From: Paragordius varius
Taxonomy: Eukaryota > Animalia > Nematomorpha
Assembly (NCBI GenBank): GCA_964247055.1
Contig: OZ176060.1
Span: forward strand, 1,674,001-1,738,000
DNA: 64,000 nt
Reading direction: 5' to 3'
The translations under genes were made by a program, and so were the position numbers. The notes below the pieces were generated by a model. The model saw only the letters and a list, made by a program, of their open reading frames with translations. It ran no database searches and was not told the DNA's origin. The stretch's first letter is position 1. The number at the start of each line of letters is the position of its first letter. Of this stretch, positions 1 to 19,737 are shown one piece after another.

Positions 1-59
1 ATATGACATATTGTTGAAAAATTTAATTTATATCAAATTTTATATAGCATACATCATGC

Positions 60-660
60 ATCATATTATTTTAAGGCATGATGAATAAATAAAATATATT
101 AAATAATTTTCTATATAATTCGAAGATGCTCAACACTTTTACCTCAGAAATTAAAACATTAAATCAAATTTATATTAAATAAAATTATATTTCTGCCAAT
201 GTATACCCAAATTTAAAAGCAACATCCTTTAAATTAAAAATTTCAGATGATAGATATGTCTATCTTCATCAAATAATATAGAAAAAGTATTTTTATATTA
301 ACTTAATATGTTTTTTTTACCGTTTCTAATACCATAAAACTTCCCTTCCACAAAATTTTGTATAAATTTAATTTTTAAGCAAAAAATATTTATCAAAAAT
401 TTCGTCAAAAGGCATATATTTAATTTTATCTATCTCAGAATTTTCCGTTTGAGAGAAATAGCCCATTTTTGAAGGACAAATAATTTGGCACTTTCGGAGA
501 CCACTCCAATTAAAGTTTAGATTGCTTTTTATATGTAGTTTATGATTTTTAGTGATATTTTTTGGAATGAAGCATTTAGCTTTCACCATAAAATTTTTTT
601 ATTTAAATGTCCCTATATTTTGCGATTTTCCGATATGAACGGTTACCGCAAGAGTAAGAC
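60..660. mobile_element. MITE/foldback-like repeat family A copy
   Basis: Shares the motifs GGCATGATG(G)AA, TTTTCTATATAATTCGA, ACCGTTTC and GAAGCATTTAGCTTTCAC with copies at about 8.1-8.6, 31.1-31.8, 36.0-36.2, 47.2-47.5, 49.1-50.5, 53.3-54.5, 55.3-56.1 and 58.7-59.3 kb. Boundaries approximate. Confidence 0.65.
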
Positions 661-789
661 TTTATTATAGCCAAAACTAAAATATTATATTACTTTTCGA
701 CGCAGAGATTAATATATTAGGCAAAATTGGGTTACCAAAGAACTGGAAAAAAGGTAAAAAAGCCAGTAATCTTTTGCTAATAAACTTAA

Positions 790-1408
790 CATTTTTTGCC
801 ACCCAATTAGAACTTACGTAAGTTATTTTGATCATTTTCAGCCAAATATGAAATAAGGCACCAACAACCAATAAAATATATTTATTGAAGTTTTATACAT
901 GTATAAATATAAAAATTTACCTTTAACGTTTATAAATTTACATAACGTTATGCAATTGTAAACAAGGTCATACCCTTATTAATAAGATATATTTTTCAAT
1001 CAAATTTACGATATTTAATTGTTCATCAAATATGAACATTAACAGAGTTTTTCCAATTATTTCATCCTCTTTTGTATTCACTCAATTCAAATAGGTTGAT
1101 TAGCCAACAATTATCAAATATAACTTTTTAACATACAAATTTTCAAATTGCATATAACTAAATTAAATTGGCCAAAAGCAAAATTATCTTTAAAAAAACA
1201 GTTACAAAACTTGAGTTATAGTTTATTATTATAATAAGCCTAAAACCAGAAAGTTGGAGTTTTTATAAAAACACAAATCCAAAACTCGCGTTTTTCTTTT
1301 AACGTCTTTAGAAGATAAAAAAACTTATGAAACTATAAGCAAATAATTAAAAACTTAGAGCTATCTCAAAAAAATTTTTTTGTTAAAAAAATTTAACCCT
1401 TTTGTACA

Positions 1409-1444
<36 letters not shown>

Positions 1445-1650
1445 TTCAAAATATTTATTTTATACATATTTTTAAATCTATCAAATACGCCCTACACCAC
1501 ACTCAAATCTTCAAGCTTTTAGGTTATGATTTTTTCCTCCAAATCTAGTTATCCTGCCTGTAACACCCCTAATGTTAAAAAATTTTTTATGACGTGAAAC
1601 CAACATGACTTGACAAACTTGCAAAAGTTAAAAAAAAATTATAACCCCAT
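790..1650 (+). repeat. Interspersed repeat family C copy (interrupted by a TA tract)
   Basis: TTTTTTGCCACCCAATT...ATCATTTTCAGC and GCCCTACACCACACT...GACTTGACAAACTTGCAA match 16140-16780 and 34420-34600. Confidence 0.65.
1411..1441. repeat. (TA)n microsatellite
   Basis: Direct reading. Confidence 0.95.
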
Positions 1651-2916
1651 GTTGACAGATTCAAATCCATACAAAAATGCCAATGTAATTTTTAAATTGC
1701 ATACATTATTTAATATGTTTTAAAGTTTAAGGTAAAACCATATTTCATGAGGCATATAGTTAATTTTCTTATGCAAAAGCACCCCGTATTTTAAAAAAAC
1801 TTGCCCCTTTGGACGGGTCCAAAAAAAATCCGGAGCCACATATAAATATAATATATTATTTAACTATTGTTTTGCTTTTTATATGTTATGAGACATAATA
1901 ATGATATTATTGAAACATTTAGTTTTCACGAAAAAAATTTTTTTAATGTGCGCATCTTTCGCCACTTTTTCAATTACCACAAAGTGAAAATAATTTTTTT
2001 TACTAGTAAGGGCTAAAATTATCATATAAAACATTTTACATTTTCTATCATTGATATAACATCAGGGTATTTTAAAGGCACTGTGTTATTGCAAAATTGT
2101 TAACGTAAAACAAAATAAATTAAAACAATTATACTATATTAGTGGAATTGGTAGATTTCATTGTATTTATAACCAAGAAAAACATACTTTTGATATCTCT
2201 TGACTATTGGTTGGCAATTGTATTAAATATAATAAATTATAATATACATCATAAGTATATAAATAATATAATAGTTAAAAATTACCACATGGTTTGTATC
2301 AACAATAAGTTGTGATGCCTCACTATAATAACAAAAAAAATATATTAATCATTTTACACTTTACAAAAAAATTGTATAATGATAATCATTTAAATTATTA
2401 TTATCGTTTGTACTTTTAAATCTTTTTATAACCTTAATAGAAAATATGGAAGATCTTAGGGAATAATGTTTTGCGTTTATGATATATATAAAAAAATTAT
2501 TCACTTGTATAAAATTTAATTAACCTAATGTGAACAAATGTGATTTTTGATTTCAGCTAATAGCAGAAAGATTTAAATAATTTTCTTTTCTAGTATTTTG
2601 GCATTTTTAATCCAAAAGCTTAGCTTTCAATTATACACGATTCATAGTTTATTTTTGCTGGTACCTTGTTATATATTAATATTTTAAATCTAATCCTTAG
2701 TATATTTTTAGCTGAGTTTTAAATTTATTTTCTAAGACATTTGTCTAATTTGCCATTATGAAAACAAATATCTCTCATATCCTTAGATGACTTAACATTT
2801 AAGTGTTACGAAATTTGCAATTCTCAAGACCAAATATTGGCTACCTGCTTGGGTGGTAATTTTAAAAATTTAGCGGACGTTTTTATCTATCTCTTACAGC
2901 AGTTTACTAAATACCA

Positions 2917-3513
2917 GACAAGTGTTGATAAGTGCAGAATAGTTATTATTCATCGGCTTTTTATTATAGACGGCTTTGGTAATTTAGGAAAATCAGTTTT
3001 TTGCAGTACAAGTGTAGATAGAGTACCTATGCATTTGAGAAAGTTGGTTTAATTTTAATTAGTAATGTCCACAGATTAATATACATCATTTGTTTTACCG
3101 AAATTTTTGAAGGGCTACCTAAAGTAAGCGAAATATCGCTTTTAAATCAACCTAAGGTCACGAGCTTTTGTGAAGGTATCCAAAAAATAGTAGCTCATAT
3201 GATGACTAGGCTTTTCAATAGCCTTAAGGAAGATGACGAAATGTGAGCTTTATAAACATATAGATAAGTAATAAGTATTGGAATTAAAATAATCTATGTT
3301 TTGTGGATTAATTTAAACATTCGATACCGTAGGCCGAATTGCGAACTCTTAAACGTAAATCAATAACGGGACATTTATAATCAGTACCTACTATAACCTA
3401 CCCCTTTTTTCTTATACTATGTCGTGACTCCATGACCTAATCTGAAACAAAGATGCATCTACTCCATTTTGTTTAACATTTGTTTTGCATGCTTTACAAG
3501 ACAGCATTGTCTG
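2917..3513 (+). repeat. 597-bp inverted duplication, copy 1
   Basis: Reverse complement of 18754-19351; by eye only one substitution and one 1-nt indel. Confidence 0.95.
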
Positions 3514-4282
3514 CTAGGAAGAAAGGTATAGGACGCCAACGATTACCCTGTTGCCGATTTTTAAAATAATGTGAAAATAACCTTCGTTCAGAATTGTGGT
3601 TCCTCAATTAAAAGATATATTTTGTAATACTTTCCCTTGCAAAAATATTGAAATTATTTAAAAAGGTTAAATAAAATTATCAAATCAAGATATCCAAAGA
3701 CGGAAACTCATATTCTCTAAATTAGCACCTAAAGTTAAAAATGACTAAGGGTAAAGGCTCTATTTTAATAATAATAAAGAACATTGAAAGAAACATAAAA
3801 GGGATGAATAAAATGAAATGTCTTGCTTCAGAGAATTAATGCATAAAACATGGCGTATAAAACGAAACTACCAAATTTCTAAAAAATTAAATGTACAAAT
3901 TTATGAGGTAAAATTATCAGGTAATAATTTAGCCTTTAGCTTATTACGTAAATTCAAGAAATCTTAAAACGATACGATATTTTTTCGAAAATGCTTCAGG
4001 GCTTCCATCACAACTCATATATGAATAATATCTTTTGTAAAAATAGGGCACAATTCAGGGTCAACCCAAAAAATTGTCGATGCTCATGTTCGATTTTAAT
4101 ATATAGGATTAAATTTATTCGCTTTATTTTTTAGGCAAATAATATTAGCTGTTTGGCCGCTGTATAAAAAATTCTCTTTGTTTTACTTACAAATTATTTT
4201 TCAATAAAATTCATTAAAGCAAAGAGTTTCTTAAAATGTAAAAATAAGCGGAAATTTGACACTCAATACAAAATATTGATTA

Positions 4283-4384
4283 CTAGATAGTATAGTTGGA
4301 AACGCGTTTAGTACATTTAATATCAAATGCTAGCAAAATCCCATTACATCCAAGAAAGATAGTATTGGTTAAGGTATTGTTTAT
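4283..4384 (-). CDS. ZP-N repeat 4, second exon; probable terminal coding exon (INNTLTNTIFLGCNGILLAFDIKCTKRVSNYTI*)
   Basis: Phase-0 acceptor ttttag|ATA; NTI strand and the fourth ZP-N Cys; ends in TAG. A weak alternative donor CGC|gtttcc exists. Confidence 0.78.
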   Translation of the reverse strand: MNNTLTNTIFLGCNGILLAFDIKCTKRVSNYTI

Positions 4385-4829
4385 CTAAAAATATAGTTTA
4401 GCATATATTTATAAAATATTTATATATTTGGCCGGAAGTTTTAACTATATTAAATTACACAGTGCACAAAATGGATGCAGTTTATGTGTTATTGGGTTTG
4501 GGCTTAATTACAGAAACTTTTGTGATCCATATTTTAAAATAAAAATTTTCGCACATTCTTTAAAACAAAATTTTTTATTTAGCATTAGGCTATTTTTTAT
4601 GATGATATAAAGAAACCACATTATGGTAACTATTTTCTTAAATAACTCATAATGCCCAAAACCCAAAATATCGCGAGAATCCTAATTTGTTTTCCGAATG
4701 TTAAATCATTTATTTATTTTTCTGTACATTATGTCATCAGATAATCCATTTTGATATTTAAGAAATGAAAAATGCTAATTTGAATAAATTTATTTTGTAA
4801 TTATTGCTATTTTTTAAAAGATAAAATAC

Positions 4830-4996
4830 TTTTACTGTTCCACATTTTTTATAATCAATGGCAAACTGAATCGATTCCGATGAATAAACATTGATATCAC
4901 ATGCTGGAGATGATTGTAAAAATTTGATGCGCCCATTATATGGCTCTGTGAATCTAATATTAACCTGTATTCCATCCATTGCGCATATGTAATTGA
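4830..4996 (-). CDS. ZP-N repeat 4, first exon (xNYICAMDGIQVNIRFTEPYNGRIKFLQSSPACDINVYSSESIQFAIDYKKCGTVK)
   Basis: Acceptor ttttaatag| in phase 1, donor AAA|gtattt in phase 0; 167 nt; three Cys and the cuticlin-like P-Y-x-G-x-I motif. Confidence 0.85.
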
Positions 4997-5026
4997 CTAT
5001 TAAAATCAACATGTATTTTTTCGGCA

Positions 5027-5029
<3 letters not shown>

Positions 5030-5108
<79 letters not shown>
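5030..5108. repeat. (TA)n microsatellite inside a short intron
   Basis: About 39 TA units between the predicted exons at 5117-5141 and 4830-4996. Confidence 0.95.
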
Positions 5109-5111
<3 letters not shown>

Positions 5112-5116
5112 CTTAC

Positions 5117-5141
5117 TGTGAGGGAAAGCTCTGAGCTTGTA
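5117..5141 (-). CDS. 25-nt linker micro-exon (YKLRAFPH + first base of I)
   Basis: actgtatag|TAC...CAC A|gtaagc; phase 0 to 1, which is exactly what is needed to join 5978-6073 to 4830-4996. Confidence 0.6.
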
Positions 5142-5977
5142 CTATACAGTAAATATTGAATTATCATATAATTTTAAATAAAGCCTGATGACATATGATT
5201 CTGTTTAAAAGTAACTTCGGTAATATCATTTATTAAATCTTTACAATATGTCCCTTCGCAATACATATAAAATTATTAAGATACCACTGAGCTACTATGC
5301 AAAAGAAAAAATGTCATCAGAATTTTATTTGAAATGATTTTCACTACTGTACATTAAATGGCGTATTAAATTTTATAAATTTTTTTCTACATAAATTGAC
5401 TTATATGAATTACATAATATGCTACTGATATGGTAGTTACTTTTACAGTGTTTATATCTAGTTTAAAAGATATCTTTTTATGGTTCCTATAATTATTATA
5501 TTGCTATATAAATAATTAATAGAAGTTTTATTTTTCAACTTTTTAACGAAATTTGCGTTTAAACGCCCTAATTAATTCTGTAAATGGATCATACATAAAA
5601 TTATCAAAATATAATATGAAAAAATTGGTTATTACTATACTACATTTAACAATAATTTTTAGGCATGGATCAAAAATTTAGGTGTATTTTATATATAACC
5701 CTAGTGTCGGTTTTAAAACTTTCTCTTTTTACGTATTTTTTTAAATATTAGGGGTTTATTTTCTAGAAAGTTATTTAAAACTAATCATGAAACCTATGAT
5801 TATAAAACATCACTTTTGTACCCAATTTTCTAATAGAAAGTTATATAATACATGTATGATTTTATTATTATTATTATAAACAATTTTAAAATAAATTTAA
5901 ATTATAATTTAAATTGTATACTAGGTGTCTTCGAAAAAAAATGAAAAATATACAGAATGCTGTTGAATCCAGGTTAC

Positions 5978-6073
5978 ATTTTGTGCTATGATATTGCGAC
6001 ACGACAAAGTTCTAATTTCTTGAAACCCTGATAGGTAGTTTATTTTAACCTTTTGTACCATCATATCGCCAAT
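5978..6073 (-). CDS. ZP-N repeat 3, second exon (IGDMMVQKVKINYLSGFQEIRTLSCRNIIAQN)
   Basis: Acceptor ggctttag|ATT in phase 0; carries the fourth Cys; donor AAT|gtaacc (alternative TCT|gtatat at 5954). Confidence 0.78.
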
Positions 6074-6908
6074 CTAAAGCCATATATAGGTGATTATAAA
6101 ACACGATTAATCAATTTATATAAATGGTAAGTTGTGAACTCATCACACCCACTCATTTACAAGTAATTTTACTCGAAATAAATTTGTGCATTTGACCACC
6201 TTGAAAAACCGCTATCCTGGTCATTAGATCATGACCATGATCATTGACCACATTTTAAAAGTAGAGAATTTTGATATTAATAAGTATTATACTATTATCA
6301 AAAACACAATTAAAACTATTATACAGCTAAAATCAATTTACATCAAGTTTTTTTCTGCTAAAATATAGCCTGTTACAAATTTAAATATTACATTATCTAA
6401 CCAAAATATACATTTATTTTCATATTGCATTAACGATAAAATATTTATAGAAAATGGCAAAAAAGTTTGAGTTGTGGATTTTTTTAACAATTCTACATTT
6501 TTAAAAAAATTGATTAATGCGCTTGAAAAGCTAAAGAAAGCCAATTATTGGCTTTTTTAAGATATTCAAATTCCAAAAGATCATGGTGCTATAAAAATAA
6601 TAGTTTTGTTATACACTATCGATTAAATGGACTAAAATCTTACATACTGACAATAGTAAACTCATATTAATCTGGATGTTAAACGGCAGTGAAATTATGA
6701 TTTTTTTTCATTAGCTTTTGGATATTTTCGGATTATGTGGCCAATTAATAAAACTGTGTATGAAAAGTATATGTCTTTCTAACAGTTAAGAAAACGTACT
6801 ACATTAATTTTATTTTTAAGGCAGCTAAATATTAAAATGCCCAAAATCATCGCAATGCAATAGTCGATAATCAGTAAAAGAATAAAAATTATATTCAGAA
6901 CAGTTTAC

Positions 6909-7075
6909 CTGAGTAACAGCACATTCTGAATATTGCATATCAAAAGTTATCCGTTTGTTACCCAACCCTTGATAAACACAAATATGTTCAGATTGAAGAG
7001 TTGTTACTCGTCCATAAAAAACACGATCGAATTCGGCAATCATTTTTATTCCGGTTTTACCACATGCTAAATTAA
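6909..7075 (-). CDS. ZP-N repeat 3, first exon (VNLACGKTGIKMIAEFDRVFYGRVTTLQSEHICVYQGLGNKRITFDMQYSECAVTQ)
   Basis: caatatag| phase 1, CAG|gtaaac phase 0; 167 nt (same length as the repeat-4 exon); three Cys and an F-Y-G-R-V motif. Confidence 0.85.
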
Positions 7076-7216
7076 CTATATTGAATAGTTGTAATAATTG
7101 ATATAAACACGCTAGTTGAAGACACAAATAATGTTGAAATTAATTTGATATATAATACTAAAAAGTCCGCAATTTATTTTATCTAATAAATATAGTTAAA
7201 ATTTGGTCGATGATAC

Positions 7217-7298
7217 CAATTGGCATTACAAAATTCAAAAACGCCGTTGTATTATACATAACTAATACTACACTCAATGCTTCATTAGGAGTATAAAA
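7217..7298 (-). CDS. Candidate linker exon (FYTPNEALSVVLVMYNTTAFLNFVMPI)
   Basis: aagatag|TTT phase 0, ATT G|gtatca phase 1; open frame, phase-compatible with 6909-7075. Confidence 0.35.
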
Positions 7299-8084
7299 CT
7301 ATCTTAACAAAACAATTATATAATGAAACACCACAAAATTAACGCACAAAATACTTAATAATTAATAATTTATTTGCATTTTCAAAAGTATGTTTAAATA
7401 TGTCTTTAACTTTGTTCTAAAGAAGAATGTTTATATATTATTTTTTGTATGTTACTTGATAAAGTTTTTCGATATACAATTAACAAGATTTACTAAATAG
7501 CTGCATTTGCAATTGTCAAACTTACTATTGTTAAATTATTTTATTTTGTTGATGCGCATATGCGCTATGGAAAAGTAGAAATATAACCAAACGTAATCAA
7601 AGATAAATGTGTTTTCTAACTGACAACTATACTGTTTAAACCTTGATAGTATCTACATCCTATACGATTACAATTTTATAAAAATGAGAATGTTATCAAT
7701 TACATCATTATTTTTTTTATTTTGCGACCCAAGATAGGTTATATTAAAAAAACAAATTTAAAAAAGTAGGGTTATCTTTTTTTAAAAATAATCCTTATAT
7801 TTTTACTTTTCCGTATAATTTCAATTTTTACTGTATATCGAAAGGCCACATGATATATAGGTCCAAGTGTTATACACCTCAAATCTAATAAACAAAAAAT
7901 GTTTTTTTCATTTTATAAAGTTTAATATTGTTTCAACATGCTTGAAATGCCATAACGTATTTTGCGTTTAGGTTTATCCTTATAATAGACAATAACAAAT
8001 TATTCGTTGATGAGTTTTATCAATCTTGTTTAAGTTTATTCTAACACAATGAAATAAATATATTGGAAAATGTATCAGGATTAT

Positions 8085-8640
8085 CATTGGTTTTGGCTCG
8101 TATGAATGATAAGAAAGTTAATTATACTTTCTAAGTGCTCCTCAGAAAATGGCACATTAAAATATTTTTTGTAATAATTTTTGATAAAAGCTAAATGCTT
8201 CATTCTAAATATCACTAAAATATATTATACAAAACTACTAATAAAAAGCAATAAAATAATTTTTTAATTAGATGGGGACTCGAAAGTCCAAAATTTTTTC
8301 TCTTCTAAAACGGGCTCTTCTAAAAAACTGATGAACGCATAATTTTTTTTAAATTAAAAAGAAAATTTTTTAAAAAATGTATACATTTAAAAAAATTCAA
8401 TTTTTTGAAATATGCGTACTTCATACTATTTCTAGGCATGATGGAAACGGTATATAAATCTTATATATTGTCAGAAAACTTTCTATATAGCTCAATGATC
8501 CTGCATATTTCTATCGCTTCAGAATTTGAATGCTAGTCCGTTTTAGAAGAGCAAAAAGTTTTTAAACTTTCGGAGCACACTTCTAAAAATCATAATACTT
8601 TATAAAATGTTTTGCTTTTTCTAAGTATTTTATGATATAT
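8085..8640. mobile_element. Repeat family A copy
   Basis: Same diagnostic motifs (GGCATGATGGAAACGGTATA, CTAGTCCGTTTTAGAAGAGC). Confidence 0.65.
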
Positions 8641-9577
8641 TTAAGTGAGAATTGGAATAAAGCTCGCAGTAGCTAACACCAAATGTACCATGAGATTCCT
8701 GATAAATTTTTCGATCGGGTTATACAAATTTCATCCAGATATTTTTTTTTGTGTAATGTCCGACAAAGCGATTTTTGGCCTTTAACAAAAAAATACAAAA
8801 TTATTAACTGCTTAACCGCATATTATCATTCTCACCAGCTCTTAGCTATCGAATGATATGTGATTCATCCATAAGTTTGATCCACATTTGACCGCACACT
8901 GATATAATTGTTTATTAATTTATTCCATTTTAAACAATTCTGTATATTATATGTTGTCAAATTTTATTTGCCAAAATTAACTATATAAATTGAGTTTCTA
9001 ATTGCATTATTTTTTAATATCCTTTTTTATTATGCACAAATCATCTCAATTTATTGTTTTTATTTCTTGTTTTAATAAAGTCATTTATATTTATTTAAAC
9101 CACATTTTTAAATCGTATTAAATAACAAATTTAAATTATTTGATATGTTTGATGACATTCTTTTTGGATATAAATTTAAAATTTGTCAAAAGTTTCGAAA
9201 ATTTTACATAATATACGTTTTTGATTGAGACAAGAAGTTTAACATATAGATTAGATATAATAATTTTATTTGATTAACTTAAATTAATAGCTGATTATAT
9301 AATAAAAAAAGCAGATTTTCTGTAAAAATAAAATTGGATCTTAAAAGATAAAAAAGCATTAAAAATTAATCGGTTTTTTATCATTACAATGAAACTTACT
9401 ATTCGTAATGGTCGTTGTATTCTAAAAAATATTTATTGAACATTTATACGATATACATATTATATGTTGAATAAATGCAGATATTTTACCTGAAAAGTTT
9501 CTTGATTGCTATAGCATATAGATAATTATACATTTATATTGACAATCATTTATAATTAATTTGAAAAATTATGGCGA

Positions 9578-9953
9578 ACGTCAAATAAATTCTTTCAAAT
9601 TATGGGTTCGGAGAAAACTTCTCCAAATAAAATGGACAGATAAAATTTCAAACACCACCATTCTAAATAAAATTAATCCAGAAATATCACTTCTGGGCAT
9701 CTTTATACGGCAAAAACAGTCCTTTTTCGGGCACATTATGAGAGCCAACTCTCTTGAAAAATCACTGATGCTGGGAAAAGTGAGTGGTACTCGTAAAAGA
9801 GGGAGAAGACGAACTCGTTGGATGGATAACATCCTCAAAGAAACCAACCAATTATTATCCGAACTAAATACCAGATCCGGTATTCGCAGTGAATGGAGAA
9901 GCTATATTTTCAATGTAGTCGGAATCGATCTTAGCAACAACAACAACAACAAC
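9578..9953 (+). mobile_element. 5'-truncated RTE (BovB-like) LINE, 3' end with (CAA)n tail
   Basis: ORF 9561-9959 reads ...FFGHIMRANSLEKSLMLGKVSGTRKRGRRRTRWMDNI..., the typical RTE C-terminus, followed by (CAA)6. Confidence 0.85.
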
Positions 9954-10325
9954 CTATAGACATCTCTTATTTAAACTTTATAATCTATCTAATTTTTTCA
10001 TCGATTAAAAAAAAACATGTTCCACAATTAGTGAAGCAGAAATTTTAAATTAAAATTATATTATAATTAATAGGGGAAATATACATGCCATCCATTTAAG
10101 AAATCGTTTAAATTTTTTTAAACGATAAAATTTATTAACTAAGAAAAAGCAATAAGCTAAATGTTTTGATTTCACAAATATGTAATTTATTTACTTATCT
10201 TTCCAAAAAATATGAGATATTTCTGTTATCTAGATTTATATCATTTTAATATTTTTATTTCTTGTGTTGTATTTTTTCAAAAACACCTTAGTAATAGATC
10301 GAACATTTTCTTAGTTTAGTCATTT

Positions 10326-10578
10326 TATATACAATTTGGTTCTTGAACTGTTCAAGGACCAACTTGAACTGTTCAAGGACCAACTTGAACTGTTCAAGGA
10401 CCAACTTGAACTGTTCAAGGACCAACTTGAACTGTTCAAGGACCAACTTGAAATGTTCAAGGACACCAACTTGAAATGTTCAAGGACACCAACTTGAAAT
10501 GTTCAAGGACACCAACTTGAAATGTTCAAGGACCAACTTGAAATGTTCAAGGACACTCTTGAAATGCAAATGGTATAT
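10326..10578 (+). repeat. 21/23-bp minisatellite array of the foldback family (unit GAACTGTTCAAGGACCAACTT)
   Basis: Five 21-mers, three 23-mers and two 21-mers, ending in the family terminus CAAATGGTATAT. Confidence 0.9.
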
Positions 10579-10919
10579 TTAAACGACGGGCTTTTGGAGT
10601 TTTTTTATTGCTTTAGCTGAGGTATATATATAGCTAATTTTTTGTAGCTTTCCAGCGCACGATATACACCAAAATTCGTTTAGCCCCTTTTTAATTGAGT
10701 TTTTTATTCCACCTCCCAATAGCATGTTTAAGAGTTGAGAATAACAGTTTGATTTCCTTGTATCGATATCATTTTGTAATTATATTTTATAAAACAATTA
10801 CATACTGTTTCGAAATTATTTATCCCTCTATTATATAAATGCTTTATTATGTTTCCTCAAAAGAATTAATGTTAAATTGTATTAACTTAATAAGTCGTAA
10901 CAATATTATCACGCTTCAA

Positions 10920-11330
10920 CAATTAATATTTATGCTAGTCCAATCTTCCAATCCCACAGCTTTATTGTTTGGCATTTGTAGTATGTTCGATTTCATTTTC
11001 AGCGTTTTTGGTCCATCAAGCTTAGTCTGTGTCCAGTAAAAATTATTTCACAGCAACTTCCCCTTTAATCTTACATTTATAATCTTTTATAATTGTTGAT
11101 TTTTGTCTTTACTTTTAAATTTAGACTTACGTAATATAGAATCTCGTTCACTCTATTTGTGACTTAATTATATCGCTTTTGTAGGTTATCAATCTTTCGT
11201 TACTCAAAGATGGTATTGGCTATAGCCATGGAAGTGTGTTGCTAATCCAAGCAAATTAGGTTCATTTTCGCCATAAGAATATCGTACCAAATTTCAAAAC
11301 ACTCTGTTTTAACCAAGATCACCAATGAAA
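10920..11330 (-). pseudogene. Highly decayed LINE (APE/RT) remnant
   Basis: Frameshifted fragments AENEIEH...MPNNKAVG resemble INEIDIENALKKMKNNKAAG of the 42.9-kb LINE. Weak. Confidence 0.3.
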
Positions 11331-11508
11331 CCCCCCACGAAAGTTTCCTATGAGCAAATGAGAGCCACTAGTTAATGATTTTTTTACCTGCCTCTGGAAA
11401 AGTTACCTTTTATAACAAATTAAAAATATGGCTGTTACTGTCTAATCTCATTAATCTGATTAAAAAATTTGCGGTTATAATCTTGCCATACTTGTCGATT
11501 ACTTTCAC

Positions 11509-11590
11509 CTTAATAACACTAGACAACAAATTTTTCTGCCACTCGAGTTTTTTGCATTTTTTGATATTTAATATCATTTTAACAGTAAAT
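11509..11590 (-). CDS. Candidate linker exon (xFTVKMILNIKKCKKLEWQKNLLSSVIK)
   Basis: Strong acceptor aatttttatttcag|, open only in phase 2 (matches the TT|gtaatc donor at 12957); donor AAG|gtgaaa in phase 0 (alternative phase-1 donor at 11439). Confidence 0.3.
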
Positions 11591-12952
11591 CTGAAATAAA
11601 AATTATAACTCGTTGGAAGAATTTTGTATAATTTGGTTTTTTAGATTATGCGCCCTCTTTATCAAAATTTTACTAAAAAATGTTTTTCTTTAAAAATATA
11701 CAAGCAATGCCCATTTGTAATATATCATTCGAAAGAGTATTAAAAAATCTATAAAATGTATACTAATATGTATTACATCGACAGTTAATATTGGGCACAA
11801 AGAGCGACAAACGCGCGAAGCGAGAGCATTTTTTTAATTGATATATTTTTAAAACTAATGGATGAAAATAGCTTAAACTTTGTCTGGATGGTGATAAATG
11901 TCCAAAAAAGTTAACACAAAAAAGTTTTTTTTGATTAAAACATTTTTTATTGCTTTTATGTCACTCAAAACAGCCATTTTTAAGTTTTTTGTTTTTTAAA
12001 AATTACCATCTCATTAATATTAATTTATTTTCTTTACAAGGCTGATAATTTCGAAAATTTAAAGATAAAAACAAAGTTTAAGGTATTTTTGATCTTTTAT
12101 AGCCATTATATAATAAATTTACAGTTATAACTATGCATTTTAGTATCCACTAGGTAAAATATTTATGATAATAATAATTTTTATTAAAAAAGCAAACCAA
12201 AAGCTTTTTCAAACATTTTTTTTAAATTAAATACTAATATAACCCTAATAATTATATTAAAATAATTTATATGATTTTCAAATTAGTTTGTCTGTGAAAA
12301 TTCTTGACTTATTTAAGGATTGAAAATTTTGACCATTTAAATCCAAATAACTTTTACATCCGATGGATTTAAATGACTTACTACCATTTAAAAGATGCAG
12401 TTTTTTGCGCTCTTTCGAATGATATAAAATACATGGCTTCATATCTAAAACTTTAAATTTTTGAAATTTCGAATTTAATGTTAAATCGGGGCCAAAAATT
12501 ATCGATAAACTCTAATATAAAAAAATTCTTCCATGTAAGACCAATTTTCTTTTCATATATACTAATTATGTACTTTAATGAAATAAATTTTAAATTTACA
12601 AGAATGGCAGTTAAAAAAAGTTAAAATTTGTTGTCTAGTGTAATATAATTGTTTTTTCTAATGTCCTTTATATTAAGGTAAATCGATAAATTTAGAATTA
12701 ATTTTACAATAACTATAAAAATATTAGTCTCATGAGAGCCTTGCATGTATCATTTTTAATATAAAACAGGATATCTTGTTTATATAATTATATCAAACAT
12801 TACACGCACAAGCTTATTGAAAAATATTTATCCTTTGTTATGCATGAAATTTTATATTGGGTTGAATTGTAGTTATTTGTTTTTGCAGGGTTAATATTAA
12901 TAACTCATCTAATTTATATCAAAATTGAGAAAACTCTATAATATATATACGA

Positions 12953-13060
12953 TTACAATGAGATATTGGTGTATTTGCATCCAAGATTAAACATATAGCG
13001 ATATCCGACATTTCGATCCTGTTGCTCCACAAACATAACATTATGGGCCTCTTCATTTTT
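12953..13060 (-). CDS. ZP-N repeat 2, second exon (KNEEAHNVMFVEQQDRNVGYRYMFNLGCKYTNISL*)
   Basis: Acceptor gtttttttatag|AAA in phase 0; carries the fourth Cys; either stops at TAA (12953) or splices at TT|gtaatc (12957). Confidence 0.8.
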   Translation of the reverse strand, partial: KNEEAHNVMFVEQQDRNVGYRYMFNLGCKYTNISL

Positions 13061-13509
13061 CTATAAAAAAACATATAATGTTACTTGTCTAAAACCTATA
13101 ATAACTCACCCTGTTATAATTCCCGTTACATTGAATATTTAATTTAAACATTTCGGCAACGTGAGGCAAAGTAGGAGTAGCAGGGAAACTGCATGCCCCA
13201 CTAGCCATGATTTTGGGAGCCGAATACGAGAATTTTATATTTATAAATTGAAATTTATTTTCAGCCATCCTAACACGATTGATTTCCGTGTCGCATAGTA
13301 TATTTTTTTTAAAAAACGGTTAAGAATTTTTGTCATAGTTTTTATAAAAAGTTCTAATTTAGCATTAATCTCAAAATTTTTATGTAAAATACACACAAAG
13401 ACGGATTTTTTAAATTATTTTATATTTTTATTAATTAATGACAACAAAACTAGAACTTTACCATGACCCAAAGGCTAAAATTTTTATCAAATACTATTTC
13501 AATTCAAGA

Positions 13510-13625
13510 GTGTCTTTGTACACTTCAAATTGCACTTGAATATTTGAAGTTGGTTAATTTTTAAAGTTTCCTCCAACTTTTTTATTTTTTTCAAGGACAC
13601 TCTTGAAGTGCAAATGGTATATATT
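13510..13625 (+). repeat. Foldback-family fragment
   Basis: TTCAAGGACACTCTTGAAGTGCAAATGGTATATAT terminus, the same type as at 10545-10578. Confidence 0.6.
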
Positions 13626-13826
13626 TGCAATAATATAAAAAATATACAACAAGCAATATAATACAGCTCTAAAGGCATTTTAAATGTTGATTGAAGCGTT
13701 TTTGCAGTTTAGCCAACTCTTACAATTGTAAAATCAAAAAGATTCAGAAAATCTTAAATTAATATTAATAATGATATGATAATTGTATTTCTTACCAAAA
13801 ATACACTATATTAAATAATTTAATAC

Positions 13827-14029
13827 CACAATAGTCCCGCAAGATTCAAAATTGAAATTGACAACCGTCGTAGACTGATTCATAGGGTTTGTATTTGGCT
13901 GAAAAGTTTTGTTATTCATAACATAAAATTGACACATCCCGAATTCGGTTTGAGCATATATATGCCCTTCAAAATGTTGCCGAAAGTAAAGCGTTATTTC
14001 AAATTGGTGTCTTTCACATCTTGGTACAA
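13827..14029 (-). CDS. ZP-N repeat 2, first exon (xVPRCERHQFEITLYFRQHFEGHIYAQTEFGMCQFYVMNNKTFQPNTNPMNQSTTVVNFNFESCGTIV); absent from the ORF track
   Basis: ataaaacag| phase 1, GTG|gtatta phase 0; 203 nt open; FEGHIY closely resembles the cuticlin ZP-N FEGHVY motif; three Cys. Confidence 0.9.
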
Positions 14030-15009
14030 CTGTTTTATAAAAGGTGCCATGAAAAATTTAAAATAAATATAAATTGACATAATTTATCCATGTTAAAATA
14101 ATTTATGAAAACTAAAGTGAAAGTGATATTTAAATTTAAATTGAAAATACTTAAGCGATATCAAACCCGTTGACAAAAGTAATCTTAGATTAGTTTCGTG
14201 CTTGACTCAATACGACACATGTAGATTTTTGACAAATCAATTTTATATATAGTTGCAACTTTGCAATTTTAGTATAAATGCAGTAGTGAATGCGAATTAG
14301 TTTTCAAAATGATTTAGTAAATTAAACTCATTTGATAATTAGGTATGTATTAAACCTAGATTTTGAGTATAACTACTTAGAAATTTTTCAATAAGAAATT
14401 TAATAAAATATAATTTTTTGCAACGAGGCTTAAGTTGATACTGTATTATGGTAAATTAAGCACTTAAAATTTTTGGCACAAGTTTTAATCAGTAACAACC
14501 CTTTAAAATTGGCTAGTTATCCTAAAATAAGCTTAAAAAGGTGTTATGCAAATCTGAAAGATATACTTTATTTTTATATCATATTTTTCTGTGTTATATG
14601 CAAATGTGAAATACATACCTTGGTTATATATCATAACTTTCACCGTTATTTGAATTGTATTATTTTTTATATTTTTTGTGTTATATGTAAATATATAACC
14701 TTTGTTACTTGAAATTTTATTGTTATAATGCAAATCATGGACAGTTAAAATTGCTATATATACACCTTAGAAAACCAAATAAATAATTCAGTTCATTTCA
14801 CATTCCTTATATTATCTCTTTATCTTAAAAGATAACAAAAGGCCATTGCGAAACTTTTTATGAATGCTCGATCAGGAATAAATAATTAGCTTCATAAATT
14901 TTTGACTCCTAAAACTGAGCGAATAGCATACAGAATATATGGGGTTGTTAACTTTATATGGATCTTTGGCCGACGATACTAATTTAATAAAGAGCAGTTG
15001 AGTAAGTAA

Positions 15010-15350
15010 GCAAATTTCAAGCGTATGATCGAAATATTGATGTTAGAGTTAAAGGTAAGTTATATAGATTAGTTGTTCAACACACAATGATGTATAGACG
15101 TGGGGCGTCAAAAAATCCAATAAAAGACATTTTAACGTGGCTGAAATGAAAATGCTTAGAATGATGTGTGGTAACAAGAAAGGACAGAGTTAAAAATAAA
15201 TTTATTCGTGGGAGCACCGATGTTAAACCAATATGGAAACAATGTCAAAAAATAGGCTACAAGATTCTAATTATATTCTAAAAATAATAGATAGTCATAT
15301 AGTTGAGGGATAACGAGGTAATATGAGAAAGCAGAAGACGCTATAGATAG
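15010..15350 (+). mobile_element. Decayed RTE LINE, C-terminal fragment
   Basis: Translates to KGKLYRLVVQHTMMY and VAEMKMLRMMCG...KDRVKNKFIRG with frameshifts. Confidence 0.7.
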
Positions 15351-16139
15351 AGCTATATGGCGAAACAGGTTGTCTCACATGACATTCATGAGTGAAAACA
15401 TGTTAAGTAATAATTAAAAACAATAATACGAAAAATATTTTTAAACATATCTTCGGTATTAAATTTGCCAGAATACATCCATGGTATTAAAAATATCAAA
15501 TTATTAATTTAACTTATTAAACCATTTATTATCATTGCTATCTAATATTTTGATAATAATATTTATATTCTAATTGTACTTGACTAGCATAAAATCTAGT
15601 TTTTATCACATGAGAGTAATTTTATTTAAAAAAATTTTTCAGAACACCATGCACGAAGTTTTGTTCATCATTAAATTTCGGTGATTTTTTAATAGATACA
15701 AGTCATTTTCTTAAATTTGAAGACTAATTACAGCGGTATTAATTATAAAACAAAATCATTTACCCTTCACCATGTTCCAAAAATGTCATAAAATACATTC
15801 AGCAAAATTTCAAAATTTTAATTAAGAAAAACATAATATCTAAAATAATTTTTAGGTCATATTTGGGATTAAATTCGGCCATTTGACTTATGAAGTTTAC
15901 ATTAATAAAAGTACAAAATAGAAGTAGCTTTTACTCTAATTATGTATAACATTATGTGGGAAAAATGGGGATCATTAAATAAAACTTAATAAATAATATC
16001 GATGAATATAAAAATGATATATGTGATTAAAATACGAGAAAAAAATTATTTTAATTAATTTTTTTAGCCTTTATTTTTGAAAATCCTTCTTGGACCCAAA
16101 TGTAAAATCAATTTTGATAATGTTTTGCGTTTAGAAATT

Positions 16140-16780
16140 GACTTGTAAGCCAAGCCTGGCAAGTTGAGCAAGATTACTTAAGCCAGCAAGTGTACACTTG
16201 AAGATCGGTGATAAAAAAACACTTGAGTCAAATCTTTTACTTATGAGTATGACAGTTTTTTGCCACCCAATTCGAATTTTATGGAAACTTTTTTGATCAT
16301 TTTCAGCTAAAATCGAAATTTTACAATATTAATATTTATTTATTAATTTTAAGATTTCGAGAATCAAATTTTTATGCGGGTTCACGGAATTGATATATTT
16401 AACATATTTTTATATTCCATGTTTTTAAATATTAGCAGAGTTCTATTATTTTATCTCTTTTGTATCCACTCAATGAATAGGTAATTAGGCAAAATTTATT
16501 AAATTAACAATTTATATCATCAGCAAAGTTACATACAAAGCCTAAATTACATACATAAATAGTTTCTAAAATAATTTTATCCATATTTTAAAATCTGTCA
16601 AGTGTGCCCTACACCACACTTGCAAAATCTATAAGTTTTACTTAATCATATGATTTTTTATCACCTCCGAATCAAGTTTTCTTGCTTGACTTAAGTCGTG
16701 TATTTTTTTTATCACATGAAAGAAATCCACGACTTGAAAAACTTGCAAGTCAAGTCAAAAAAATTTTTTATCACCCCAAT
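16140..16780 (+). repeat. Interspersed repeat family C copy
   Basis: Matches 790-1650 and 34420-34600; rich in CTTG/CAAG; ends AAAATTTTTTATCACCCC. Confidence 0.65.
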
Positions 16781-16929
16781 ATTTCACTGCTTCATTGTTT
16801 TTTTTAATATATTTCATTAGATGACTGTTCAAATAAAGATCTATCACTTTAATTTGGACCTCAAACATTTCATTTGTAATTTAAATATTTTACGAATTTC
16901 GTTAATATACACTATGCATATTTCGCCAA

Positions 16930-17037
16930 CACAGTAAAGTATGGAAACAAAAAAATGTTTTAAATAAATAAAATAATGTAAGATTGGAAAAAATTGTTAA
17001 TTTAACAGTTTGTTGTGTTTTCCATACACTACTGTGC
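16930..17037. mobile_element. Small MITE-like inverted repeat
   Basis: CACAGTAAAGTATGGAAAC ... TTTCCATACACTACTGTG. Confidence 0.45.
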
Positions 17038-17374
17038 TGCCAATTGACCAACTATGATGTGCAAAAGTCAGCATTAAAATATATGCTGATAAATAATCTG
17101 CTGTCAGAAATACTATGCTCACAATGAAAGTTATTTTTATATCTTGTTTTATATTATTAATAATCGTTTCATTGATTGGAAAAAAAATTTAAATGTTCGC
17201 TGAGGGTGAACACTCTCAGTTGTGTTAAGATATTGATTTTATTAACTAAGAATATTGAGAAATTGATTCGATTGAATTGCGATCAACTGGAAAAACAATA
17301 TCAGTCTGAGACAGGTTTACCTTATATATTTTAAATCAACAAAATTCAATAAAATAGATAATACAAAATTATAC

Positions 17375-17399
17375 CTCTGGGTCGACATGTACATGTTTC
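17375..17399 (-). CDS. Candidate 25-nt linker micro-exon (ETCTCRPR + first base of V)
   Basis: tttaatatag|GAA...AGA G|gtataa; phase 0 to 1, same length and phase as 5117-5141. Confidence 0.3.
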
Positions 17400-18301
17400 C
17401 TATATTAAATATATAAATTTTATATTAATTTTTATAAAAAAATAAAGCATTTAGATTTCAACAAAAACAATTTTAACTACATCCTCAACAATTTTGCCAT
17501 GGAGTTCTTAACGCAAAAGTTTAAATATTTTCTTAAATCTTTCGTGGCGTGTTTGTGCCAACTCAGATGAGTTTATAAATCGATAATATTAAAACCAAGT
17601 AATGTTGGTTAGGAGTAGTATATTTTATAAAAATGATAATGGAATTTACAATTCAAAATTGTATTATTCATTTAAATTTGCGAAGATATTTGGAAATTTT
17701 TATTATCACAAAGTAATAAATATGTATCCATTCATAACAAACAACTGTTAAAATAAATTAGAATTGAAAGTGTTAACATATTAAACGTCATTCATGTATA
17801 CAAAGTTTAGTCGTTTATATTCATGTATATAAATATTATAGACGCTGATTTACTTTATCTATATTAATCGACCATATGTAAATTAAAGATATTATTTATT
17901 TATTAACTCGTTTTATATAAAATAAACATTATTTTGAAACCAAAGGTGACCAAATACAAAATAAATTATAAAATTTTAAGTGAACGTTTTTGAGATTTAA
18001 ATGATATTATCAAATTATTTCTTTCACCTATTTTGAAAATACCTGATTACATAAGATACATGGGTGAAATGTTATTTGAACTTTAAATGTAATTTCATTT
18101 ATGCTAAAAATTATATTAGCATACTTTTTTTAAAATTTTCAGAAAAAAATATACCTGAGTTATTTATTTTAAATTTATTAGTTAAATTTTGATATATTAA
18201 TTAATATCTAACTAAGTTGCTATATTATGGTGAAAGTAATAAATATTATAATATAAATTTTTCCAATACATTACTAATAATGATTAATATACATATCTAA
18301 C

Positions 18302-18445
18302 CGGAAATAAGGATTCCAAATAAGACTGACTCGGAATTTCACCAATTTTTGATTTTTTTTCAACGATGCATGCCAGATCAAAATTAGTAAACGTTTTCTC
18401 GTTTTCATGAGCGACTGTGAGATTCGCAACTATAAGGTTCCCCTT
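18302..18445 (-). CDS. ZP-N repeat 1, second exon (KGNLIVANLTVAHENEKTFTNFDLACIVEKKSKIGEIPSQSYLESLFP)
   Basis: gcatgtatag|AAG phase 0; carries the fourth Cys. The 3' end is uncertain: phase-0 donor at 18302, or phase-1 donors at 18331 or 18343. Confidence 0.75.
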
Positions 18446-18753
18446 CTATACATGCATTAAATATTATACTCTAAATTTGAGTAAATGTAAAAAATTGACT
18501 ATGTTAATTTTATAAAATTGTCACTATTATGTATAATAAAAAATATTATAAAATTTGCGTTTATATAGTTTTGGAATATTGTAGATATGGAGTATTTTAC
18601 TAAACAATTTTTTAAACAGAAACACACAAATGATCTTTATTTAATTTATAATTGTCTTTATCCTATTTCAACTAGGGCCTCCCAGAGACACGATGTGAAA
18701 AAATCTTAAAAGACTAATCTTTAAACATAACTGCCAAAAGAGATAAATGCTCA

Positions 18754-19351
18754 CAGACAATGCTGTCTTGTAAAGCATGCAAAACAAATGTTAAACAAAA
18801 TGGAGTAGATGCATCTTTGTTTCAGATTAGGTCATGGAGTCACGACATAGTATAAGAAAAAAGGGGTAGGTTATAGTAGGTACTGATTATAAATGTCCCG
18901 TTATTGATTTACGTTTAAGAGTTCGCAATTCGGCCTACGGTATCGAATGTTTAAATTAATCCACAAAACATAGATTATTTTAATTCCAATACTTATTACT
19001 TATCTATATGTTTATAAAGCTCACATTTCGTCATCTTCCTTAAGGCTATTGAAAAGCCTAGTCATCATATGAGCTACTATTTTTTGGATACCTTCACAAA
19101 AGCTCGTGACCTTAGGTTGATTTAAAAGCGATATTTCGCTTACTTTAGGTAGCCCTTCAAAAATTTCGGTAAAACAAATGATGTATATTAATCTGTGGAC
19201 ATTACTAATTAAAATTAAACCAACTTTCTCAAATGCATAGGTACTCTATCTACACTTGTACTGCAAAAAACTGATTTTTCCTAAATTACCAAAGCCGTCT
19301 ATAATAAAAAGCCGATGAATAATAACTATTCTGCACTTATCAACTCTTGTC
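18754..19351 (-). repeat. 598-bp inverted duplication, copy 2 (intronic)
   Basis: Reverse complement of 2917-3513. Confidence 0.95.
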
Positions 19352-19490
19352 GTATAAGATTATCTATAACAAAAAATATTTTGGAGGTTTTAACTATATG
19401 GTTTACAGAAAAGCTGAATAGACCTTCATATATATATATTTATATATTCAAAAAATTAAATTATTAATTAATAATCCAATAATATGATAC

Positions 19491-19678
19491 TTTATATGTA
19501 AAACATTTTCCAACTCTATATGACAATTTATATTCCTTGTTGTTCTTTAATTGATTGCGTTTAAAACAGGAATCTTCTCCTATATTTTTCGTGCTGTTTT
19601 TGGGTCGTATGAACCCAAGAAAGGGTTGAAGAAAAGTAAAAGTTATATTGATTTCGTTTTCTGTACAATCCATAAAAT
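19491..19678 (-). CDS. ZP-N repeat 1, first exon (xFMDCTENEINITFTFLQPFLGFIRPKNSTKNIGEDSCFKRNQLKNNKEYKLSYRVGKCFTYK)
   Basis: ttattatttag| phase 1, AAA|gtatca phase 0; 188 nt; three Cys and a P-F-x-G-x-I motif. Confidence 0.85.
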
Positions 19679-19737
19679 CTAAATAATAAATATTACTAAG
19701 AATTATTTTCCCAAACAATTATTTTATATATAGATAC

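What the first reader, a model, noticed from the sequence alone, without database searches (positions are those of the whole stretch)
4283..19678. Hidden spliced gene with four tandem cuticlin-type ZP-N domains and no visible ZP-C
Seen: eight minus-strand exons pair into four complete 4-Cys domains (19491-19678 + 18302-18445; 13827-14029 + 12953-13060; 6909-7075 + 5978-6073; 4830-4996 + 4283-4384). Each has the [FY]-x-G-x-[IV] motif of invertebrate cuticlin ZP-N (repeat 2 reads FEGHIY). Established: ZP-N is the polymerising half of the ZP module. Tandem ZP-N repeats are known from vertebrate ZP2 and abalone VERL, but there they precede a full ZP-N/ZP-C module. Inference: this may be a secreted, ZP-N-only polymer or cross-linker of cuticle or egg coat with strongly diverged repeats, an architecture I do not recognise. 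The last exon ends in an in-frame stop and I found no ZP-C, furin site or TM exon in 1-4280.
Basis: partly seen in the sequence, partly recalled or inferred. Interest (0 to 1): 0.82.

Follow-up and report, generated by a model that had tools for sequence, protein, structure and literature searches.

The report
Hairworm gene of nine ZP-N domains
The four domains are real, but they are only the first four of nine "ZP-N" adhesion-type domains of one very long, probably secreted hairworm gene that runs off the window and, unusually, has no ZP-C partner domain.

Summary
All eight minus-strand exons exist and encode four 4-Cys domains. Sequence profiles support cuticlin-type ZP-N; so do folds of the orthologue's domains. 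The gene model needs correcting.

- **Orthologue:** a profile of the four first-half exons found one strong relative among 1.84 billion proteins. It is a 1,553-aa "uncharacterized protein" of the horsehair worm Gordionus with nine such domains, a signal peptide, a long spacer, and no ZP-C or membrane anchor.
- **Extent:** that protein maps colinearly, domain for domain, onto at least 56 kb of this contig. The window holds domains 1-4. Domains 5-9 and a 703-codon exon lie beyond the window's left edge.
- **The "terminal stop":** the TAG after the last exon overlaps a splice donor (TA|GTAATC). This joins in frame to the next ZP-N exon 4.7 kb downstream.
- **Exon ends:** One junction needs a 25-nt intron, a size class already noted in this genome.
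- **Still open:** the B2-to-C1 and 7C-to-8N junctions, and the gene's 5' end.
- **Expression:** no RNA evidence was found.

The ZP-N-only reading is supported and extended. The proposed matrix cross-linker role is inference.

The parts
19491..19678 (-). Exon A1: first half (C1-C3) of ZP-N domain 1. An alternative phase-2 acceptor would start it at 19695.
   Evidence: AG/GT flanks. CUT_N E 1.8e-3. Acceptors listed. Best match is P0001 domain 1.
18331..18445 (-). Exon A2: second half (C4) of domain 1 plus linker.
   Evidence: Sequence. Frame-compatible paths to B1.
13827..14029 (-). Exon B1: first half of ZP-N domain 2.
   Evidence: CUT_N E 5e-4. tblastn to P0001 228-264, E 0.002.
12957..13060 (-). 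Exon B2: second half of domain 2. It ends at the phase-2 donor TT|GTAATC. The link to C1 is unresolved.
   Evidence: tblastn to P0001 279-309, E 0.008. No robust path to C1.
6909..7075 (-). Exon C1: first half of ZP-N domain 3.
   Evidence: 27% identity to D1. tblastn to P0001 333-409, E 5e-7.
5954..6073 (-). Exon C2a: second half of domain 3.
   Evidence: tblastn to P0001 386-430, E 4e-4. Path.
5929..5953 (-). Proposed 25-nt GT-AG intron (GTATATTTTTCATTTTTTTTCGAAG).
   Evidence: It is part of the top-scoring in-frame path from C2 to D1, and of the only listed full-length path (shown top 8 of 27) that avoids the (TA)n tract. Read contigs confirm the sequence exactly. The size class was reported by earlier notes for this genome.
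5922..5928 (-). 7-nt exon piece (ACACCTA) before the phase-1 donor GTATAC at 5921.
   Evidence: Inferred; no RNA evidence.
4830..4996 (-). Exon D1: first half of ZP-N domain 4.
   Evidence: CUT_N E 0.023. tblastn to P0001 433-487, 46% identity, E 7e-9.
4284..4384 (-). Exon D2: second half of domain 4, carrying a fifth Cys that Gordionus also has. It ends at the phase-2 donor TA|GTAATC, so the TAG is split by the intron.
   Evidence: tblastn to P0001 487-519, 55% identity, E 1e-5. In-frame join to the next ZP-N exon.
1..4283 (-). First 4,283 nt of the 4,722-nt intron between D2 and exon 5Na. Exon 5Na starts at contig C11:1673561, which is window position -439.
2917..3513 (.). One arm of a near-perfect 597-nt inverted duplication. 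It lies in the D2-5Na intron.
   Evidence: the repeat finder I1/I2. Read depth about 2x the flanks, meaning two copies.
18754..19351 (.). The other arm of the inverted duplication. It lies in the A1-A2 intron.

Best explanation
The window holds the 5' part (ZP-N domains 1-4) of one large multi-exon gene on the minus strand of contig C11, spanning about 1637850 to at least 1693678. The gene is the orthologue of Gordionus LOC135922728.

The predicted protein has this layout:
- six cuticlin-type ZP-N domains, most of them split after Cys3 into two exons;
- a roughly 670-residue K/N/S-rich spacer with no known domain;
- three more ZP-N domains, then a stop.

It has no ZP-C, no cleavage site and no membrane anchor. 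The apparent stops after exons B2, C2 and D2 are the G/TAx bases of phase-2 splice donors.

Shown: the domains, their ZP-N character, their one-to-one colinearity with the Gordionus protein, and the lack of ZP-C.

Inferred:
- The protein is secreted. The orthologue has a signal peptide, and the window's exons carry 9 N-glycosylation sequons.
- Without a ZP-C it cannot polymerise in the regulated way of a ZP module, so it most likely works as a multivalent binder or cross-linker in an extracellular matrix (cuticle, or egg envelope or egg string). It would use its ZP-N domains much as ZP1-N1, ZP2-N1-3 or the VERL repeats do. The conserved fifth Cys of domain 4 may add a covalent link.
- I put about 0.8 on the gene identity and architecture, and about 0.45 on the cross-linker mechanism.
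For: - **Single strong relative:** the profile of the four first-half exons against 1.84e9 proteins gave one strong hit, P0001 (E 2e-57, nine matched stretches). It is XP_065313245.1 of Gordionus sp..
- **Other hits:** the remaining significant hits checked (16 of the other 23 fetched; 3 more were spurious repeat proteins) are ordinary arthropod-type cuticlin ZP-N.
- **Colinearity:** tblastn of P0001 against 104 kb of this contig is colinear on the minus strand. Per-exon score sums put the best match on the diagonal for 9 of 9 domains.
- **Family content of P0001:** CUT_N E 4.5e-23, with no ZP-C. No PF00100 or PF25301 hit lies on contig C11.
- **Fold of P0001 domain 4:** AF2 pLDDT 90.3. The top 19 VIA-align rows are all ZP-N structures, Z 8.9-7.8. 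ESM Atlas matches to ecdysozoan ZP proteins reach TM 0.80-0.90 at rmsd 1.4-2.0 over all 85 residues.
- **Last domain:** it also ranks VERL, endoglin and ZP1-N1 first.
- **In-frame joins:** canonical in-frame joins exist for D2 to 5Na and C2 to D1.
- **Coding signal:** a 703-codon open frame follows domain 6. Its chance probability is about 2e-27 at this base composition.
- **Gene end:** the gene ends a few codons after domain 9.
Against: - No RNA evidence. The runs guessed to be RNA from this organism hold none of the exons.
- The junctions B2 to C1 and 7C to 8N have no frame-compatible canonical path, and no linker exon could be recognised.
- An in-frame TAG sits inside a stretch that aligns with the Gordionus linker before domain 6.
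- The 5' end and signal-peptide exon were not found.
- The window's own exons could not be folded as whole domains, so the fold evidence comes from the orthologue.
- The function is inferred from architecture only.
Confidence: 0.78

Rival explanations
1. The locus is a cluster of separate small genes. Each would encode one or two ZP-N domains and end at the stops after B2, D2 and 5C.
For: In-frame TAA/TAG codons directly follow B2, D2 and 5C. B2 to C1 cannot be joined in frame.
Against: - All first-half exons begin at acceptor sites in phase 1 or 2, which marks them as internal exons.
- No signal-peptide exon lies in front of B, C or D.
- D2 joins 5Na in frame, giving the Tyr seen in Gordionus.
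- The nine domains are colinear and one-to-one with a single 1,553-aa protein. Two annotation sets of Gordionus (accessions XP_ and CAK) hold near-identical full-length models.
Confidence: 0.07
2. The locus is a recently inactivated pseudogene of the nine-domain gene.
For: No RNA found. Two junctions are unresolved. There is a possible TAG in the linker before domain 6.
Against: - Every domain exon is open and keeps all four Cys.
- A 703-codon frame stays open in 27% GC DNA, where a stop is expected about every 12 codons.
- The apparent frame problem at C2/D1 is removed by a 25-nt intron of a class already noted in this genome.
Confidence: 0.1
3. It is a conventional ZP-module protein whose ZP-C and TM exons were simply missed.
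For: ZP-C is harder to detect exon by exon. The 3' end was not confirmed by RNA.
Against: - The full-length Gordionus protein ends 18 residues after the last domain's fourth Cys, with no ZP-C hit at E<=1.
- There is no ZP-C profile hit on contig C11, although 12 were found elsewhere in the genome next to their ZP-N.
- Here the frame stops right after domain 9.
Confidence: 0.03

Closest known systems
Gordionus sp. m RMFG-2023 LOC135922728 (XP_065313245.1, 'uncharacterized protein', 1,553 aa)
   Same: Nine ZP-N domains in the same order, each best matching its positional counterpart. A long spacer lies between domains 6 and 7. The fifth Cys in domain 4 is shared. There is no ZP-C or TM. An intron falls at the same place after Cys3 in domain 2.
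   Different: tblastn identity is only about 24-55% per exon. Linkers here are shorter. The spacer is unrelated in sequence: K/N/I/S-rich here, G/K/E/P-rich there. The 14-residue Cys-containing tail of the Gordionus protein is absent here.
Abalone VERL (vitelline envelope receptor for lysin)
   Same: A long tandem array of ZP-N domains. VERL repeats 2 and 3 are among the top structural matches.
   Different: VERL ends in a ZP-C-containing ZP region (PMC13361971). From my own knowledge, it also has a membrane anchor and most of its repeats are homogenised. Here there is no ZP-C, and the repeats are old and individually conserved.
Vertebrate ZP1/ZP2/ZP4/ZPAX N-terminal ZP-N repeats
   Same: Extra ZP-N copies used for binding or cross-linking. 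ZP1-N1 and ZP2-N1N2 are top structural matches, and the profile hits ZP2-N1 (5ii6) at E 0.013.
   Different: These proteins carry 1-6 ZP-N copies (PMC9154058), and to my knowledge the extra copies always sit upstream of a full ZP module. Here there are nine copies and no module.
Ecdysozoan cuticlin-type ZP-module proteins (Pfam CUT_N + CUT_C/Zona_pellucida; e.g. the nematode cuticlin and arthropod dusky/miniature type)
   Same: Closest at sequence and model level: CUT_N hits, and ESM Atlas TM 0.80-0.90.
   Different: In most of the matched Atlas clusters that carry Pfam labels, ZP-N occurs with Zona_pellucida/CUT_C. In this genome those genes have ZP-N and ZP-C within a few kb.
Single-domain ZP-N-only proteins (PLAC1, OOSP1; named from my own knowledge; 'isolated ZP-N domains' in PMC7456536)
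   Same: ZP-N without ZP-C.
   Different: One domain in a small protein, against nine domains plus a spacer here.

Membership tests
ZP-N domain (Pfam CUT_N PF25057 / ZP-N PF23344) | Profile match over the curated threshold | tested here: inconclusive
   The window's exons are half-domains scoring 19.2, 20.9 and 15.6 bits against a cut-off of 27. The orthologue scores 82 bits, E 4.5e-23. The window's first halves against the orthologue's repeats give hhalign 98.5%. The joined domains were not searched.
ZP-N domain (Pfam CUT_N PF25057 / ZP-N PF23344) | Four conserved Cys in the spacing C1..C2..C3..C4 | tested here: met
   All four window domains and all nine domains of the gene carry them. The disulfide pairing itself could not be read, because no model coordinates were available.
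ZP-N domain (Pfam CUT_N PF25057 / ZP-N PF23344) | Ig-like beta-sandwich most similar to solved ZP-N structures | tested here: met
   Tested on the orthologue's domain 4. pLDDT is 90.3. The top 19 PDB rows are ZP-N (Z 8.9-7.8). Atlas TM is 0.80-0.90. Domain 9 is less discriminating, because FnIII ties at Z about 8.
ZP module protein (ZP-N + ZP-C) | A ZP-C domain C-terminal to ZP-N | tested here: not met
   No PF00100 or PF25301 hit in P0001 at E<=1. None on contig C11. The frame stops after domain 9.
ZP module protein (ZP-N + ZP-C) | Consensus cleavage site plus a C-terminal propeptide with a TM or GPI anchor | tested here: not met
   P0001 ends ..TCFTKECKEVCPGRLDRISF with no hydrophobic tail. 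Here the sequence reads ..TCLVKE followed by a stop. Judged by inspection only.
Orthologue of Gordionus LOC135922728 | Same domain number and order, with reciprocal positional best matches | tested here: met
   Colinear tblastn. Best match on the diagonal for 9/9 rows and 8/9 columns, the ninth being a near tie.
VERL/ZP2-type tandem ZP-N array | Tandem ZP-N repeats placed N-terminal to a ZP module in an egg-coat protein | tested here: not met
   The tandem repeats are present, but the module is absent. An egg-coat location was not testable.

The most novel reading that the evidence does not exclude
Hairworms carry a conserved secreted protein built only of nine ancient, individually conserved ZP-N domains and a spacer. 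It would work in a matrix with no ZP-C at all, using the conserved unpaired Cys of domain 4 for covalent cross-links. That would be a natural test of whether ZP-N arrays can act on their own, and of the idea that the ZP module arose from duplicated ZP-N domains.
Probability: 0.35. Interest if true: 0.7.

Novelty: new variant of a known kind. Interest (0 to 1): 0.55.

Why it matters
ZP-N is the interaction half of the zona pellucida module. Extra ZP-N copies are known upstream of full modules (ZP1/2/4, VERL) and as single isolated domains. Nine tandem ZP-N domains with no ZP-C, conserved domain for domain between two distant hairworms, is an architecture I found in neither the papers nor the protein libraries searched here. 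It gives a natural case for asking what ZP-N arrays do without ZP-C regulation.

It is also a practical example of how phase-2 GTAA donors and roughly 25-nt introns in this AT-rich genome make real exons look as if they end in stops.

The gene family is so far limited to this genome and Gordionus, and its function is unknown, so the interest is moderate.

Tried and rejected
1. **Assembly error in the T8 run at about 5935-5945.** I suspected a 1-nt error to explain the C2/D1 frame break. Rejected: read contigs of two DNA runs match the window exactly over 5120-7399. A 25-nt intron solves the frame instead.
2. **Signal-peptide exons in front of each domain.** None was convincing. Candidates at window 30920 (MRYQRGLICIIIIICVF.., GTAAGT donor, phase 2) and 33146 remain speculative.
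3. **Linker exons between B2/C1, C2/D1 and D2/5Na, sought by similarity to the Gordionus linkers.** Scores did not exceed the opposite-strand control.
4. **An acidic N-terminal region like the one in Gordionus.** Not found.
5. **hhalign of the four second-half exons against the repeat profile.** Uninformative at 2.7% probability. Their identity rests on pairwise tblastn matches to P0001.
It has no compatible acceptor.
7. **Other multi-stretch hits (P0004, P0007, P0014).** These are unrelated simple repeats.
8. **Word search with P0001 residues 100-760.** It found only P0001 itself.
9. **Pfam scan of the 703-codon exon.** Nothing found.
10. **Locating the Gordionus gene's DNA.** Not on record.
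Full report
**1. Observation**

Each pair carries four Cys, and the motif reads FLGFI, FEGHI, FYGRV and YNGRI.

Exon by exon, three first halves hit Pfam CUT_N positions 6-63 with E 1.8e-3, 5e-4 and 0.023. Each is below the 27-bit cut-off, as expected for half a domain. The fourth, C1, is 27% identical to D1.

The DNA is 27% GC, where a stop is expected about every 12 codons. An open exon of 60 codons therefore has a chance probability of about 0.005.

**2.

All first-half exons start in phase 1. This led me to look outside the window.

**3. Relatives**

A profile of the four first-half exons (alignment A1) was searched against 1.84 billion representative proteins.
- One strong hit came back: P0001, E 2e-57, with nine matched stretches. 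It is XP_065313245.1, "uncharacterized protein LOC135922728", of the horsehair worm Gordionus sp. m RMFG-2023.
- Two annotation sets hold near-identical models of 1,533-1,554 aa.
- Of the other 23 significant hits, the 16 single-stretch ones I fetched are ordinary arthropod-type cuticlin ZP-N. Three multi-stretch ones I fetched are unrelated simple repeats.
- P0001 has a signal peptide, nine groups of four Cys, and a 490-residue G/K/E/P-rich spacer between domains 6 and 7. It ends 18 residues after the fourth Cys of the last domain.
- Pfam gives CUT_N at E 4.5e-23 and no ZP-C. The precomputed second family, PF28434, is named Ig_Let-653 by the Atlas tables.

**4. Extent of the gene here**

The window is G000:C11:1674001-1738000. 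I fetched 40 kb to its left.

tblastn of P0001 against the combined 104 kb is colinear on the minus strand:
- Domain 5: contig 1673561-1673438, 1671022-1670945 and 1667525-1667394.
- Domain 6: about 1661101-1660904 and 1659943 onward.
- Domain 7: 1654931-1654773 and 1654096-1653986.
- Domain 8: 1648992-1648834 and 1646921-1646814.
- Domain 9: 1642650-1642444 and 1637939-1637850.

The second exon of domain 6 runs on as a 703-codon open frame, contig 1659943-1657835. It is K/N/I/S-rich and has no Pfam family. Its chance probability is about 2e-27.

Summing per-exon local scores, with the exons kept apart, each of the nine domains here scores best against its positional counterpart in P0001. That is 9/9 rows and 8/9 columns, the ninth being a near tie. 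The nine-domain layout is therefore older than the split of the two worms, and the repeats have not been homogenised.

After domain 9 the frame stops (..TCLVKE TAA). An optional 48-nt intron would add three residues before the stop.

No ZP-C profile hit (PF00100, PF25301) lies on contig C11. Twelve were found elsewhere in the genome, most of them within a few kb of a CUT_N hit.

**5. Splicing**

Earlier notes on this genome report GT-AG introns of 22-33 nt and donors that are little more than GT followed by A or T. The donors I see fit that pattern: GTATCA, GTATTA, GTAAAC, GTATTT and GTAATC.

Allowing such introns, a path search gave these results:
- **D2 to 5Na:** D2 ends at 4284 with TA|GTAATC. 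It joins in phase 2 to AG|T AAA TAT.. at contig 1673561 (window -439), across a 4,722-nt intron. This gives ..SNYTI-Y-KYFIVYGVC, compared with Gordionus ..HSMTIY..VYGVC.
- **C2 to D1:** C2 runs to 5954. A 25-nt intron (5929-5953) and a 7-nt piece (5922-5928) then lead to the phase-1 donor GTATAC and to D1, giving ..NVTWIQQHS-TP-I-NYIC.
- **A2 to B1:** A2 reaches B1 from the phase-1 donors at 18330 or 18342.
- **Pattern:** B2, C2, D2, 5C and 9C all end with xx|GTAA or xx|GTAT. This creates the apparent stops.
- **Unresolved:** B2 to C1 and 7C to 8N have no compatible canonical path. A TAG sits in a stretch that aligns with the Gordionus linker before domain 6.
- **5' end:** not found.

**6. Reads**

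Logan contigs of two DNA runs from the same sample reproduce window 3484-5020 and 5120-7399 without a single difference. The T8 run and the TAG are therefore real sequence.

The runs guessed to be RNA held essentially none of the sampled words of 4283-7075. The one laid on window 1400-7399 gave only a spurious 33-nt match. There is thus no expression evidence either way.

**7. Fold**

Only short junction peptides were assembled inside scripts, to test frame continuity. Whole domains of this species were therefore neither folded nor scanned; the orthologue's domains were used instead.
- **P0001 domain 4** (counterpart of D), folded with an alignment of the repeats, gives pLDDT 90.3.
  - Foldseek's best rows are VERL repeats, ZP1-N1, endoglin and uromodulin.
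  - VIA-align gives Z 8.9-7.8, with the top 19 rows all ZP-N.
  - The ESM Atlas gives TM 0.80-0.90 at rmsd 1.4-2.0 over all 85 residues to arthropod and nematode ZP proteins.
- The repeat profile hits ZP2-N1 (5ii6) at E 0.013.
- **Domain 9** gives pLDDT 83.8. It also ranks VERL, endoglin and ZP1-N1 first, but FnIII domains tie at Z about 8.
- The window's first halves match the repeat profile at 98.5%. The second halves are supported only by pairwise matches with E 0.008 to 1e-5.

**8. What it is and how it may work**

Identity is well supported. This is the first four of nine ZP-N domains of a hairworm-specific, probably secreted protein that lacks a ZP-C.

The mechanism is inference:
- Canonical ZP polymerisation needs the ZP-C with its propeptide. 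Isolated ZP-N can interact on its own (PMC7456536).
- Extra ZP-N copies in ZP1, ZP2 and VERL serve cross-linking or partner binding (entry titles; PMC9154058; PMC13361971).
- A multivalent matrix binder or cross-linker is therefore the most likely role.
- Two features fit that role: the nine N-glycosylation sequons in the window's exons, and the fifth Cys of domain 4 shared with Gordionus.
- Whether the matrix is cuticle or egg envelope cannot be told from these data.

**9. Novelty**

No paper held both "Nematomorpha" and "cuticlin". The ZP papers I read for tandem or isolated ZP-N did not describe tandem ZP-N arrays without a ZP-C. The word search with P0001 found only P0001 itself. I could not screen all databases for proteins with many CUT_N domains and no ZP-C, so the claim of novelty is hedged. 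The Gordionus protein is already in RefSeq, unnamed.

Noticed in passing
window 2917-3513 and 18754-19351: A 597-nt inverted duplication (a 525-nt arm at 100% and a 76-nt arm at 99%) sits in two introns of this gene, A1-A2 and D2-5Na, bracketing exons A2 to D2. Read depth is about twice that of the flanks, which means exactly two copies. In the pre-mRNA the arms could pair, with possible effects on exon skipping or back-splicing. This is untested.
   Followed up: partly
window 5929-5953: A 25-nt GT-AG intron followed by a 7-nt exon piece is needed to keep the frame between domains 3 and 4. This fits the tiny-intron class that earlier notes report for this genome.
   Followed up: partly
window 10312-10579, 20131-20357, 20505-20577, 22431-22552, 22918-23032: There are families of 21-nt tandem repeats (units like TTGAACAATTCAAATTCACCC and AAGGACCAACTTGAACTGTTC) in both orientations. 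Some form inverted pairs within and between introns.
   Followed up: no
window 9561-9959 (+), 41345-44259 (-): A LINE reverse-transcriptase tail fragment lies inside the B2-C1 intron. A longer RTE-like LINE with endonuclease and RT frames lies further upstream.
   Followed up: no
window 5027-5117: A (TA)n microsatellite lies directly upstream of the D1 acceptor. It reads as (IY)n in the D1 frame and produces spurious long open frames.
   Followed up: no
G000:C2:1196287-1196936 (+): This is a likely orthologue of a second Gordionus protein (P0002, 315 aa; two ZP-N domains plus an S/T-rich tail, with no ZP-C hit). No ZP-C profile hit lies nearby, so hairworms may have more than one ZP-N-only gene.
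   Followed up: partly
contig C11:1661105 region (window about -12895): An in-frame TAG sits inside a stretch that aligns with the Gordionus linker before domain 6 (GSMLFCL*FNTIYMNIL against ASMGNVINTISVSQPYEANIL). It could be a different splice pattern or a real nonsense change.
   Followed up: partly
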